A DNA stretch of 62,997 nucleotides, counting the filler, from Hyphochytrium catenoides (lineage: Eukaryota; Protista; Hyphochytriomycota), in NCBI GenBank assembly GCA_900088475.1. It is 6 parts of 6 records of this genome, joined end to end, with 100 filler letters (N's around TTAATTAATTAA, not from the genome) between each part and the next. Parts side by side here need not be neighbours in the genome. Positions count along the whole stretch, not along the records: positions 1 to 18,804 come from FLMG01001369.1; 5 more parts are not named here. One strand, given 5' to 3'. Below the pieces are notes generated by a model. The model saw nothing but the letters and a program-made list of their open reading frames with translations, was not told the origin of the DNA and ran no database searches. This document shows, piece by piece, positions 6,791-9,542 of this stretch (positions are counted from its first letter, which is position 1; each line of letters opens with the position of its first letter). The position numbers were made by a program, and so were the translations under genes.

Positions 6791-8105
6791 TCGCACTTTT
6801 GTCAAGGCAATGGCCGCATCGGCGATCTGCACGAGATGAATCATTTGTCTGATAACTGCAAAGGGAACGCAGATCGCCCCCAGGACTTGCCAGAGGCCCC
6901 AGCGTCCGAGCACGAGAGGTCCTCGTCCATAGCGAAGTACATAGAGAAGCACGAGACAGAGTTCGTTGAGGAGAAAGACAAGAGAGAGAGAGAGAGGAAA
7001 CTTCTTGCAGGCAAGAAAGAGATGCTGTCCTTCAGGGTTGAGAGAGAAGGCCTTTCTCTCTCTTGCCCGTCTCTCTCTCTCTCTCTCCGTGGGAGGAGGG
7101 GAGCGGAGGTTTGACGGGAAAGACTGAGAAGGCGTGCTTCCGGGCGTTGTGAGCTTGTGAATAATCTTCGTGGTGACTGTGTGCTCGATCTGCGTCACAT
7201 CTGTGCAGCTTATTGTTAGCCAACCAGAGAGACACTCGAGCAGAGCCAGAAGAGGAAAGAGAGTCTCTCTCCCTCTCTCTCTTTCTCCCAACATTGGGGA
7301 AGAAGAGAGAGTGAGGGCGTAGAAGAGACAACCGGAAGAGAAGCGATCTACTCCTGCCGCTAGCACGTCATTGAAAATGGAAGAGTTGGACGAGGGCATG
7401 AGAGATGGGCGAGAGAGAAGATCGAGAGAGAGAATGAGAAGATGCAACTGGGCAAACGTGCACCAGTCAGAGGAAGAGCAGTATTTGAGAGAGATGAGAG
7501 ACAGAGCAGCGCGAGAGTAGTGGAAGAGAGCCGCGAGAGAGAAGAGAGGCTTGAAATCGGAGAGAGAGGAAGAAGAAGAAGAGGAAGAAGAGAAAGATCC
7601 TCCTCTCTCTCCTCGCTCTGGCTCGACAATTTTCCAGCTTTNNNNNNNNNNNNNNNNNNNNNNNNNNNNNNNNNNNNNNNNNNNNNNNNNNNNNNNNNAG
7701 AAGAGGACGAGAGAGAAAAGGAGCAGAGATGAATGAGGGAGAAAGAAGGTGCGTAAGACACAGACAGAAGAGTTTGAGAGACAGAGGGGAGAAAGGACAA
7801 AATTGAGGAGACAAGTGGTGTGAGAGAGAGCGGGGAGAGAGAGACAAAAGAGAGAGCGAGATAGAGAACAAGAAGGCAAAGAGAGAGAGAGGGGAGAAGA
7901 CAGAGAGGGAGAGAGAGAGACAGAGAGAGAACAAAAGAAAGGACGAAACAAACGAGAGTAGTGAGAGAGAGAGTAGGCGTTGGGACCGTTGAGAGAGAAC
8001 AGAGAATAGACTGTCAGAATGAGGAGTTGAAGAGAGAGAAACATTGAGGCCACAATTAGGAGGCGGAAGATCAGAGAAAGAGTGGAGAAAGAGAGAGAGG
8101 AAAAC

Positions 8106-8139
<34 letters not shown>

Positions 8140-8699
8140 CTGCCTAAACCTTCTGTTCCTGTCGGATCAATAAGAACAGCGGTGTCTCCTCCTTTTCGAA
8201 AGACTTCTTTGTTTCTTAGACGGTCTCCTCCTCCTCCTCCTTCCTTCCACAAGAGATAACGACCCTGACTCTCCCGACGATCGAAACCGAGAGAGCCTGT
8301 TCAAGAGAGAGAGAGAGAGAGAGAGAGATAGATAGATAGAGAGAGAGAGAGAAAGAGAGAGAGATAGACACCGAGAGAGAGAGAAGAGAAAAAGGAGTGG
8401 AAGAGAGAAAAAGAGAGAGGGAGGAAAGTGCCGCGAGAGATAGGAAAGAGGATGGTGAGATAATCAAGTAGATTAAAGCCAGGGAGGAAGGAAATTGAGA
8501 AACAGTGAGAGTGGAGTTATCCGAGAGGGGAGACAGAGAGAGAAGAAAAAAAGAGAAAGAAAGAGAGAGAGAGAGAGAGAGGTAAGAAAACCCCCTATAA
8601 TTGGAGAAATGAATGGCAGAACGAGGAACAATGGGGAAGAGGATGTATGAAGAGAAAGGTTTGAAAAAGGCGATATCATAGTTAGTCCCAGAGAAAGAG

Positions 8700-8753
<54 letters not shown>

Positions 8754-8906
8754 GAGGGAGAGCCTAACCTGGTGCACACCAGAGGACAAGACTTCCCTTC
8801 GGAGGAAGCGCGTAGAAGTCTGGGAAGTGATAGACTTCCTTCCTCTCCGCGGTGCTGAGAGAGAAACCGCTCAGGTCAACTTCCTAGGGAAGATGGAGGG
8901 ACACAA

Positions 8907-8937
<31 letters not shown>

Positions 8938-9541
8938 AGAGAGAGAAGAGAAAGAGTCTGTGTGAGAGAAGAGAGGGCTGAGCGATTAGAAAGCAGAGAA
9001 CGCGGACGAAGAAGAAAGAGAGGACGTATTGAAAGCTTATGAGAGAGAGAGAAAGAGAGGGTAGAGACGGAGAGAGAGAGAGTGAGCAAAAAGAGAGAGA
9101 GAGAAAAGGCAGAGCGAGAAAAAGGAAGAGGGTCACAAGCAGAAAGAGTCGAATAGAGGAATATACGTAACACTAAGCAAAAAGGGCATAACAGAATCTA
9201 AAGGCATACTCATTTCTCTCTCTCTCTCTCTCTCTCTCACGTTTTCTCTCTCTCTCTCTCTCTCTCACGTTTTCTCTCTCTCTCTCTCTCTCTCACGTTT
9301 TCTCTCTCTCTCTGTCTCTTTCTCTCTCTCTCTCTCTCTCTCTTCCGTGGTTGCTGCCCTCGTCGCCTTACCTCTTCCGTAGGGTTAAAGATAGTGACAG
9401 ACTGCGCAGTGAGGTCTAAGTGAGAGAGAAAGACCGTCATGGGCTGCATCTTCTCTGACCAGAGAGAGGACGAAGTGTAGAAAAGACGCGGTCTCTCCAT
9501 AAAGGGAAGGATAATCCTTCGATTGAGCGCTATCACGTCCA

Positions 9542-9542
<1 letters not shown>
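6791..9542 (-). CDS. Lamin-tail-domain (LTD) protein fused to a degenerate CDP-alcohol phosphatidyltransferase (PI-synthase-like) membrane domain
   Basis: Exons 9542-9372, 8883-8769 and 8296-8150 splice in phase to VFLSHLDLTAQSVTIFNPTEEEVDLSGFSL...VYHFPDFYALPPKGSLVLWCAPG...YLLW...EVFRKGGDTAVLIDPTGTE, the LTD pattern. A large exon from about 7641 to 6791 (both ends at N gaps) reads FHYSRAALSLISL..LDLLS..VDRFSSGCL..LECLSGWL..NELCLVLLYV..GPLV..IRQMIHLVQIADAA, collinear by eye with eukaryotic PIS. The start codon and final exon (possibly ending at 6587) are uncertain. Confidence 0.75.

What the first reader, a model, noticed from the sequence alone, without database searches (positions are those of the whole stretch)
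6791..9542. Lamin-tail Ig domain fused to a PI-synthase-like membrane domain
Seen: three small in-phase exons hidden in microsatellite encode a complete LTD-type fold (NPTEEEVDLSGF..YHFP..LPPKGSLVLW..GDTAVLIDPTG). They lie directly upstream, on the same strand, of an exon collinear with phosphatidylinositol synthase. No lamin coiled-coil rod is present. Inference: an ER/nuclear-envelope membrane protein displaying a lamin-like Ig domain, possibly linking lipid synthesis to a lamina-like or protein-docking function. I cannot say whether this architecture is already catalogued in other stramenopiles.
Basis: partly seen in the sequence, partly recalled or inferred. Interest (0 to 1): 0.8.

Follow-up and report, generated by a model that had tools for sequence, protein, structure and literature searches.

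The report
Lamin-tail domain gene with membrane tail
Three small exons buried in microsatellite DNA do encode a lamin-tail (Ig-like) domain, and about 0.7 kb downstream on the same strand lies a real membrane-protein exon, but no tool identifies that exon as phosphatidylinositol synthase and an assembly gap leaves the fusion of the two unproven.

Summary
The gene is on the minus strand. The lamin-tail domain (LTD) is real. Exon 2 (8883-8769) matches Pfam PF00932 at E=2.6e-4, profile positions 34-70. Exon 3 (8296-8150) matches the same model at positions 63-101 (12.3 bits). The two are collinear and their splice phases fit. Exon 1 (9542-9372) gives no profile hit.

Downstream, 7470-6791 is one open frame (as open in only 7 of 2000 shuffles) with three strong hydrophobic peaks, so it is a real membrane-protein exon.

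The phosphatidylinositol synthase (PIS) reading has no tool support:
- PF01066, NCBIfam and PDB give nothing at E<=10.
- phmmer against 1.84 billion proteins gives nothing at E<=0.001.
- The family signature DxxDGxxAR...GxxxDxxxD is absent from every frame.
- An E. coli PgsA control scores 134 bits on PF01066.

A collinear resemblance to PIS exists only in my memory, with six of the eight signature residues replaced.

The fusion is plausible. The locus is boxed in by Cdc37 and a USP gene, and an acceptor at 8012-8011 puts exon 3 in frame with the membrane frame. It is not proven, because gap 7642-7698 lies between the two parts and all three frames are open across it.

Most likely this is an orphan LTD-plus-membrane protein that is not an active PIS. 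The genome style resembles Physarum. Interest is moderate.

The parts
9372..9542 (-). Exon 1 (57 codons): ATG at 9542, about 30 non-hydrophobic residues, then a beta-strand-like stretch ending ...SVTIFNPTEE. Presumed first third of the LTD. Donor GAG|GTAAGG, phase 0.
   Evidence: Sequence. It is the best of the six frames by codon log-odds (+3.4). No Pfam hit at E<=10, so its LTD assignment rests on pattern and on continuity with E2.
8884..9371 (-). Intron 1. Contains a 28-nt minisatellite (9217-9343, 4.6 copies) and (GA)n/(CT)n tracts.
   Evidence: TRF. Splice sites read.
8769..8883 (-). Exon 2: EVDLSGFSLSTAERKEVYHFPDFYALPPKGSLVLWCAP(G), the core of the LTD. Bounded by stop codons in its own frame, so it must be spliced. 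Phase 1 at its 3' end.
   Evidence: Pfam PF00932 LTD, E=2.6e-4 to 3.1e-4, 21.5-21.8 bits, profile 34-70 of 109.
8297..8768 (-). Intron 2, almost entirely CT-rich microsatellite on the coding strand.
   Evidence: TRF. Sequence.
8150..8296 (-). Exon 3: (G)SLGFDRRESQGRYLLWKEGGGGGDRLRNKEVFRKGGDTAVLIDPTGTE, the C-terminal part of the LTD. Donor AAG|GTTTAG, phase 1.
   Evidence: Pfam PF00932, 12.3-12.4 bits, E=0.21-0.23, profile 63-101 of 109, directly following the E2 match. Best frame by codon log-odds.
7699..8149 (-). CT-rich stretch between the LTD and the gap. It holds one good acceptor (ttctgacag| at 8012-8011). An exon starting at 8010 would be in frame with E3 (phase 1) and with the frame that carries the membrane stretch. 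Whether it is exon or intron is unresolved.
   Evidence: Phase arithmetic. All three frames are open here. No Pfam or NCBIfam hit.
7642..7698 (.). Assembly gap (57 N, estimated length) between the LTD exons and the membrane stretch.
   Evidence: Continuity and frame are not testable. No spanning sequence found.
6791..7470 (-). Membrane-protein coding stretch: one open frame of at least 226 codons, open upstream as far as 8143. Hydrophobic peaks at 7261-7205, 6994-6938 and 6886-6830, with two GA-coded charged inserts. No detectable relative. The CDP-alcohol phosphotransferase signature is absent. The 3' end is cut by gap 6726-6790.
   Evidence: Fully open in only 7 of 2000 dinucleotide shuffles. 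Codon log-odds +16.7 for 7027-6794. Hydropathy. Blank in Pfam, NCBIfam, PDB, phmmer against 1.84e9 proteins and the word search. Motif scan.

Best explanation
One minus-strand gene, bounded by a divergent Cdc37 gene upstream and a USP gene downstream, encodes a protein with two parts. The N-terminus is a lamin-tail-type Ig-like domain with no signal peptide, no rod and no preceding membrane segment. The C-terminal part is a polytopic membrane region: three strong hydrophobic segments, with up to six helices possible. The membrane region is an orphan at the sequence level. As readable, it is not an active CDP-alcohol phosphotransferase or PIS. At most it is a decayed PIS derivative that kept the helices but lost six of the eight signature residues.

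The likely mode of action is that of a membrane-anchored adaptor. The helices hold the protein in an endomembrane (ER or nuclear envelope is a guess). The N-terminal LTD, exposed on the cytosolic or nucleoplasmic face because nothing would translocate it, acts as a binding module.

Shown: the LTD exons, the coding and hydrophobic nature of 7470-6791, and the absence of the signature. Inferred: a single transcript, the topology, the location and the adaptor role.
For: LTD: two collinear Pfam PF00932 matches on adjacent, phase-compatible exons.

Membrane stretch: open frame with p about 0.0035 by shuffling, positive codon log-odds and hydrophobic peaks.

One gene: the Cdc37 ATG is at 10609 on the + strand, only 1,066 bp from the E1 ATG, and CDC37_C scores E=8e-13. 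The USP Cys-box exon is at 3222-3124 (E=7e-7), with a probable ATG at 4826. Only 680-740 bp of CT-rich DNA separate E3 from the membrane frame, against about 1-1.9 kb for the two flanking intergenic spaces. E3 ends at a splice donor and not at a stop. The acceptor at 8012-8011 puts E3 in the very frame (one in three by chance) that carries the membrane stretch.

Not an enzyme: no DGxxAR and no GxxxDxxxD in any frame of the locus. PF01066 gives nothing at E<=10, while the E. coli PgsA control scores 134 bits and retrieves PDB family members.
Against: There is no transcript evidence. Gap 7642-7698 sits exactly between the two halves, and being 'in frame' across it means nothing because all three frames are open. 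The donors of E2 (GTTAGG) and E3 (GTTTAG) are less canonical than the GTAAG/GTGAG donors seen in the neighbouring genes. An ATG at 7398 could start a separate small membrane protein. E1 has no profile support. The gap could hide an exon carrying the catalytic signature. No homologue of either half was recovered, so nothing is conserved to lean on. The AF2 models are unusable (pLDDT 52 and 49).
Confidence: 0.45

Rival explanations
1. Two separate minus-strand genes. The first is a small soluble LTD-only protein (E1-E3 plus a short tail lost in the CT-rich region or the gap). The second is an independent small membrane protein, starting for example at the ATG at 7398.
For: The gap and about 0.7 kb of low-complexity DNA lie between them. 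An in-frame ATG exists at 7398. The open frames across the CT-rich DNA carry no information. The Physarum paper says that short exons and introns are often missing at scaffold gaps.
Against: E3 ends at a donor with no nearby stop in any frame. 680-740 bp would have to hold a 3' UTR, a promoter and a 5' UTR, where the other intergenic spaces in the window are 1-1.9 kb. Codon log-odds still favour the membrane frame upstream of 7398 (7552-7412: +4.0, best of six frames).
Confidence: 0.25
2. One reading: a bona fide, active phosphatidylinositol synthase carrying an N-terminal LTD, with the exon that holds the catalytic signature hidden in gap 7642-7698.
For: From memory only, and not a test: 7552-6791 looks collinear with human and yeast PIS, with a block ...NEL..LLY.....GPLV... 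and a block F...L....DR.S..CL in the right order. The gap length is only an estimate. A PNxxS at 7984-7970 fits the P(D/N)xx(T/S) motif of TM1 (PMC4634129), but it sits in CT-coded, serine-rich sequence.
Against: Both halves of the signature would have to lie in the gap, since no GxxxDxxxD is found downstream of it. The place that the remembered alignment assigns to the signature reads D..SR..LM........N...A...D instead. PF01066, at 152 positions, spans most of such an enzyme and still gives nothing. phmmer against 1.84e9 proteins is blank at E<=1e-3.
Confidence: 0.1
3. The membrane stretch is a catalytically dead PIS paralogue (pseudoenzyme) fused to the LTD. It keeps the six-helix dimerising scaffold and has lost six of the eight signature residues.
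For: The same remembered collinearity as in the previous rival, now including the degenerate signature position (SLDLLSRPSLMPSSNSSIFNDVLAAGVDR, keeping only D1 and D4). CDP-alcohol phosphotransferases are homodimeric six-TM proteins (PMC4634129). Loss of the signature would explain the PF01066 miss.
Against: No tool result supports any PIS ancestry. Much of the 'aligned' N-terminal half is translated CT-rich DNA, where L/S/F-rich matches to membrane helices come cheaply. For example, 'HYSR' occurs twice by chance from CACTACTCTCG, and I could also 'see' PIS-like residues in another frame.
Confidence: 0.15
4. The LTD exons are a decaying or unexpressed relic, and only the membrane exon, or neither, is functional.
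For: Weak donors at E2 and E3. E1 is undetected by the profile. No relatives anywhere.
Against: All three exons are intact, phase-compatible and free of stops. The LTD core still scores at E about 3e-4 on 38 residues.
Confidence: 0.05

Closest known systems
Lamin tail domain (Pfam PF00932) proteins: nuclear lamins including Dictyostelium NE81, animal LMNTD proteins, and many bacterial LTD fusions
   Same: An Ig-like LTD core is recognised by the family profile across about 68 of 109 positions. It shows the typical ...N-P-x-x-x-x-V-D-L-S-G-[FW] and G-D-T-x-x-L-x-D motifs.
   Different: There is no head, no 370-residue rod, no NLS and no visible CaaX (lamin definition in PMC11816917). Here the LTD is N-terminal and is probably followed by membrane helices. 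I know of no catalogued architecture like this (from my own knowledge; not searchable with these tools).
Phosphatidylinositol synthase (CDIPT/Pis1), CDP-alcohol phosphotransferase family PF01066
   Same: Similar size and a multi-helix hydrophobic character. There is a collinear resemblance in the last two helices, recalled from memory only.
   Different: The eight absolutely conserved signature residues D1xxD2G1xxAR...G2xxxD3xxxD4 (PMC4634129) are not present. There is no PF01066, NCBIfam, PDB or phmmer match, whereas the E. coli PgsA control matches strongly.
Inner-nuclear-membrane or ER adaptor proteins that present a soluble binding domain on a membrane anchor (for example LEM/HeH-type proteins)
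   Same: The general logic is alike: a soluble binding fold at the N-terminus tethered by transmembrane helices (inference).
   Different: There is no sequence relation. Localisation is untested here.

Membership tests
LTD (Pfam PF00932) | Match to the family profile over the Ig-like core | tested here: met
E2: E=2.6e-4, 21.8 bits, profile 34-70. E3: 12.3 bits, profile 63-101. The two are collinear on adjacent, phase-compatible exons. Each is below the 34.3-bit gathering score; the sum is about 34 bits.
LTD (Pfam PF00932) | N-terminal third of the domain (profile 1-33) | tested here: inconclusive
   E1 gives no hit at E<=10, whether whole or trimmed. By eye it ends with a typical ...V-T-I-F-N-P-T-E-E strand.
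LTD (Pfam PF00932) | Beta-sandwich fold | not tested
   This needs the joined exons, and that step was left out. Single exons give no PDB sequence hit.
Nuclear lamin (intermediate filament) | Head plus roughly 370-residue coiled-coil rod N-terminal to the LTD | tested here: not met
   The LTD starts about 30 residues after the ATG at 9542. The divergent Cdc37 ATG is 1,066 bp upstream. No such ORF is present. Definition from PMC11816917.
Nuclear lamin (intermediate filament) | NLS and C-terminal CaaX box | tested here: inconclusive
   None is seen. The C-terminus is lost in gap 6726-6790.
CDP-alcohol phosphotransferase / PIS (PF01066) | Signature D1xxD2G1xxAR...G2xxxD3xxxD4 (eight absolutely conserved residues; PMC4634129) | tested here: not met
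   A regex scan over all six frames finds no DGxxAR, DxxDG or GxxxDxxxD on the minus strand anywhere in 6791-9542. Caveat: gap 7642-7698 is unread.
CDP-alcohol phosphotransferase / PIS (PF01066) | Match to the family profile (152 positions, gathering score 22 bits) | tested here: not met
   No family at E<=10 for 6794-7552, 7310-7552, 7310-7639, 6794-7411 or smaller pieces. NCBIfam is blank. The E. coli PgsA control scores 134.2 bits over profile 1-152.
CDP-alcohol phosphotransferase / PIS (PF01066) | Significant sequence similarity to any family member | tested here: not met
   phmmer against 1.84e9 representatives gives 0 hits at E<=1e-3 (query 6794-7411 only). The word search is blank. PDB returns none at E<=10, while PgsA retrieves 8 family chains. 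BLASTP against PgsA gives E=3.5.
CDP-alcohol phosphotransferase / PIS (PF01066) | P(D/N)xx(T/S) at the start of TM1, and 6-10 TM helices | tested here: inconclusive
   PNAYS at 7984-7970 lies in the right frame, but inside CT-coded, serine-rich sequence where such a 5-mer is cheap. There are three strong hydropathy peaks. AF2 proposes more helices, but at pLDDT 49-52.

The most novel reading that the evidence does not exclude
A lamin-tail Ig domain is fused to a catalytically dead paralogue of phosphatidylinositol synthase in a Physarum-like amoebozoan. The six-helix scaffold, which dimerises in this enzyme family, anchors the LTD at the ER or nuclear envelope. It could pair with the active PIS and so tie PI synthesis sites to a lamina-like or chromatin partner. 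This would be a pseudoenzyme adaptor of a kind not described before.
Probability: 0.15. Interest if true: 0.7.

Novelty: new variant of a known kind. Interest (0 to 1): 0.4.

Why it matters
LTDs outside lamins are poorly understood in eukaryotes. An LTD placed at the N-terminus of a polytopic membrane protein would be an unusual way to present this fold on an endomembrane, and it would bear on how lamina-like functions are organised in protists. If the membrane part proved to be PIS-derived, it would add a pseudoenzyme branch to an essential lipid-synthesis family. As it stands, the firm result is more modest: a genuine LTD-coding gene hidden in microsatellite-rich DNA, next to an orphan membrane exon. 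The enzymatic label should not be propagated into annotation.

Tried and rejected
1. Pfam, NCBIfam and PDB phmmer on the membrane stretch, whole and in pieces, were blank at E<=10.
2. The word-indexed search of 5.8e9 clusters, with the 206-residue stretch and with its last 82 residues, was blank. Note the length window of 113-360 aa.
3. phmmer against 1.84e9 representatives was blank at E<=1e-3. In hindsight the query should have started at 7552 and not 7411.
4. AF2 single-sequence models of 206 and 253 residues gave pLDDT 52 and 49. Foldseek against PDB on the first gave only noise, best E=2.6. No fold search was run on the second.
5. An exact DNA word and a protein-guided scan of metagenome contigs, plus a viral scan, found no relatives.
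6. Taxon identification through the neighbouring 475-residue LRR ORF failed: no exact record and no homologues.
7. PDB phmmer with single LTD exons gave only chance hits.
8. I searched paper texts for printed PIS peptide strings, to turn my remembered alignment into a citable one. Nothing was found.
9. I tested whether 'HYSR' occurring on both sides of the gap marks a duplication or a haplotig join. Only low-complexity repeats were found, so this was rejected.
10. I considered strand asymmetry of the CT-rich tracts as a marker of the transcription unit. I rejected it because the Cdc37 and USP introns show both polarities.
11. I looked for a plus-strand gene under the finding. This was rejected by stop codons and codon log-odds.
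Full report
**Orientation and anatomy.** The feature is on the minus strand. Reading 9800-6700 in reverse complement shows short blocks of ordinary sequence separated by (CT)n/(GA)n microsatellite (TRF) and by runs of N at 9833-9869, 7642-7698 and 6726-6790. Three blocks have the form of spliced exons.
- E1 is 9542-9372. It has an ATG at 9542 and 57 codons, ends ...SVTIFNPTEE, and has donor GAG|GTAAGG in phase 0.
- E2 is 8883-8769. Its acceptor is ...ccctag|, it has in-frame stops on both sides, and its donor is CAG|GTTAGG in phase 1.
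- E3 is 8296-8150. Its acceptor is ...gaacag| and its donor is AAG|GTTTAG in phase 1.

The split codon between E2 and E3 (g + gc) reads Gly, and the frame carries on.

**Is it a lamin-tail domain?** Exon by exon, E2 (38-39 residues) hits Pfam PF00932 (LTD) at E=2.6e-4 to 3.1e-4 and 21.5-21.8 bits, on profile positions 34-70 of 109. E3 hits the same model at 12.3-12.4 bits (E about 0.2), on positions 63-101. Two neighbouring, phase-compatible exons matching one of 24,736 models in the correct order cannot reasonably be chance, even after the roughly 45 pieces I scanned. E1 gives no hit at E<=10, whether whole or trimmed. Its role as the first third of the domain rests on its strand-like pattern and on its seamless join to E2. 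Each exon is below the 34.3-bit gathering score, and the two add up to about 34 bits. I did not score or fold the joined protein, because that step was left out. Single exons find nothing in the PDB by sequence.

It is not a lamin. The domain begins about 30 residues after the start codon, and there is no rod, NLS or visible CaaX (lamin definition in PMC11816917).

**The downstream stretch.** From 7470 to the gap edge at 6791 one minus-strand frame is completely open (at least 226 codons). Only 7 of 2000 dinucleotide-preserving shuffles of this stretch have any fully open frame. A codon log-odds trained on neighbouring coding sequence gives +16.7 for 7027-6794 in that frame, against negative values in the other five. 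The middle part, 7276-7136, scores poorly at -10.3. Kyte-Doolittle peaks lie at 7261-7205, 6994-6938 and 6886-6830. This is real coding sequence for a membrane protein. Gap 6726-6790 removes its 3' end.

**Is it PIS?** Nothing I could run says so.
- Pfam gives no family at E<=10 for the stretch taken whole (6794-7552 or 6794-7411) or in pieces.
- NCBIfam gives none.
- PDB phmmer gives only chance hits.
- The word-indexed search is blank.
- phmmer against 1.84 billion representatives finds nothing at E<=0.001.

[quoted passage not shown] A regex over all six frames finds no DGxxAR, DxxDG or GxxxDxxxD on the minus strand of the locus.

As a positive control, E. coli PgsA (L001) hits PF01066 at 134 bits over all 152 profile positions. 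It also retrieves eight CDP-alcohol phosphotransferase chains from the PDB. The profile therefore spans most of such an enzyme, and the blank here is informative. BLASTP of the stretch against PgsA gives E=3.5. The PDB list shows no eukaryotic PIS, so the PDB blank says nothing about the PIS-specific C-terminal helices.

**What remains of the PIS idea.** From memory of human CDIPT and yeast Pis1, which is a lead and not a test, the stretch looks collinear with PIS. There is a block NEL..LLY.....GPLV near 6960-6900, and a block F...L....DR.S..CL near 7385-7330 at the place of the second half of the signature. On that alignment only D1 and D4 of the eight signature residues survive.

I could not verify this. 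My rough BLOSUM estimate for the best block is under 30 bits, which would not survive a database search.

Much of the N-terminal 'alignment' falls in translated CT-rich DNA, where L/S/F-rich matches are cheap. 'HYSR' turns up twice through the chance word CACTACTCTCG. I could also read PIS-like residues in a different frame. I therefore give PIS ancestry, active or dead, about one chance in four.

**One gene or two?** The neighbours box the locus in. A Cdc37 gene runs on the plus strand from an ATG at 10609 (MASKGFDYSKWDKIE...) to a CDC37_C domain at 13242-13631 (E=8e-13; sequence). The E1 ATG is thus 1,066 bp from a divergent start, and E1 is very probably the first coding exon. A USP gene lies downstream on the minus strand. 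Its UCH Cys-box exon is at 3222-3124 (E=7e-7), and its probable start is MFLFGDF... at 4826.

Between E3 and the membrane frame there are only about 680-740 bp, all CT-rich apart from the gap. E3 ends at a donor and not at a stop. The only good acceptor before the gap (ttctgacag| at 8012-8011) gives an exon start at 8010. With E3's phase 1, that falls exactly in the frame carrying the whole membrane stretch, a one-in-three coincidence. The acceptors at 7551-7550 and 7449-7448 would need a phase-0 donor.

Against a single gene: there are no transcripts, an ATG at 7398 could start an independent gene, and the gap lies between the halves.

**The gap, as asked.** All three minus-strand frames are stop-free across 7642-7698 (8300-7470, 8143-6590 and 8013-7363), simply because CT-rich DNA has no stops on that strand. 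The N length is an estimate. 'In frame' therefore cannot be tested, and the long ORF through the gap is not evidence. Scans for spanning or related sequence found nothing.

**Structure.** Single-sequence AF2 models of 206 and 253 residues are all-helical but of low confidence (pLDDT 52 and 49). Foldseek against the PDB on the first returns noise (best E=2.6).

**Source organism.** No relative of any window protein was found. The genome style is distinctive: many short exons, introns made of di- or oligonucleotide repeats flanked by splice signals, pyrimidine-rich tracts and very many assembly gaps. It matches the published description of the Physarum polycephalum assembly almost word for word (PMC4758236). 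This is a lead and is not shown. The contig is not human.

**Verdict.** There is a real LTD on three microsatellite-hidden exons, and a real membrane exon downstream on the same strand. The PIS label and any link to lipid synthesis are not supported. The most likely reading (0.45) is a single gene for an N-terminal LTD on an orphan polytopic membrane anchor, acting as an adaptor and not as an enzyme. The rivals are two separate genes (0.25), a dead PIS paralogue fused to the LTD (0.15), an active PIS with the signature hidden in the gap (0.10), and a relic (0.05).

Comparison with reference PIS sequences was left out because none was available by reference.

Noticed in passing
window 10609-13631 (+): A Cdc37 co-chaperone gene in many small exons. 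Its start MASKGFDYSKWDKIE is at 10609, and its CDC37_C domain is at 13242-13631 (Pfam E=8e-13). It is divergently arranged with the LTD gene, and the two ATGs are 1,066 bp apart.
   Followed up: partly
window 4826-3124 and below (-): A ubiquitin-specific protease gene. The UCH Cys-box exon GLKNQGNTCFQNVVIQSLF is at 3222-3124 (Pfam E=7e-7). Its probable first exon begins MFLFGDFTEEE, which is an FGDF motif like the G3BP-binding N-terminus of USP10 (from memory).
   Followed up: partly
window 15632-14208 (-): An intron-free 475-codon ORF with C-terminal RNI-type leucine-rich repeats (LRR_6, E=2e-7). Its N-terminal region reminded me of a KIX-like helical domain, but Pfam did not report one. There is no exact record and no homologue among 8000 scored candidates.
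   Followed up: partly
window 9217-9343: A 28-nt minisatellite (TCTCTCTCTCTCTCTCTCTCTCACGTTT, 4.6 copies, 93% match) inside intron 1 of the LTD gene. It has the opposite purine/pyrimidine polarity to the rest of the gene's repeats.
   Followed up: no
whole piece 1-18804: Ten N gaps of 20-160 bases, nearly all abutting GA/CT microsatellite. Introns are largely made of such repeats. This matches the description of the Physarum polycephalum assembly (PMC4758236). The source organism is probably a myxogastrid amoebozoan and not a stramenopile, but this is unproven.
   Followed up: partly
window 16800-18300: About 1.5 kb of non-repetitive, higher-complexity sequence with several 50-115-codon open stretches on both strands. 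None has a Pfam match at E<=0.1. Its nature is unknown.
   Followed up: partly
window 7972-7947 and 7530-7505 (-): The word CACTACTCTCG occurs on both sides of gap 7642-7698 and gives 'HYSR' twice in the same frame. The repeat search shows only low-complexity similarity, so this is coincidence and not a duplicated or mis-joined segment.
   Followed up: yes
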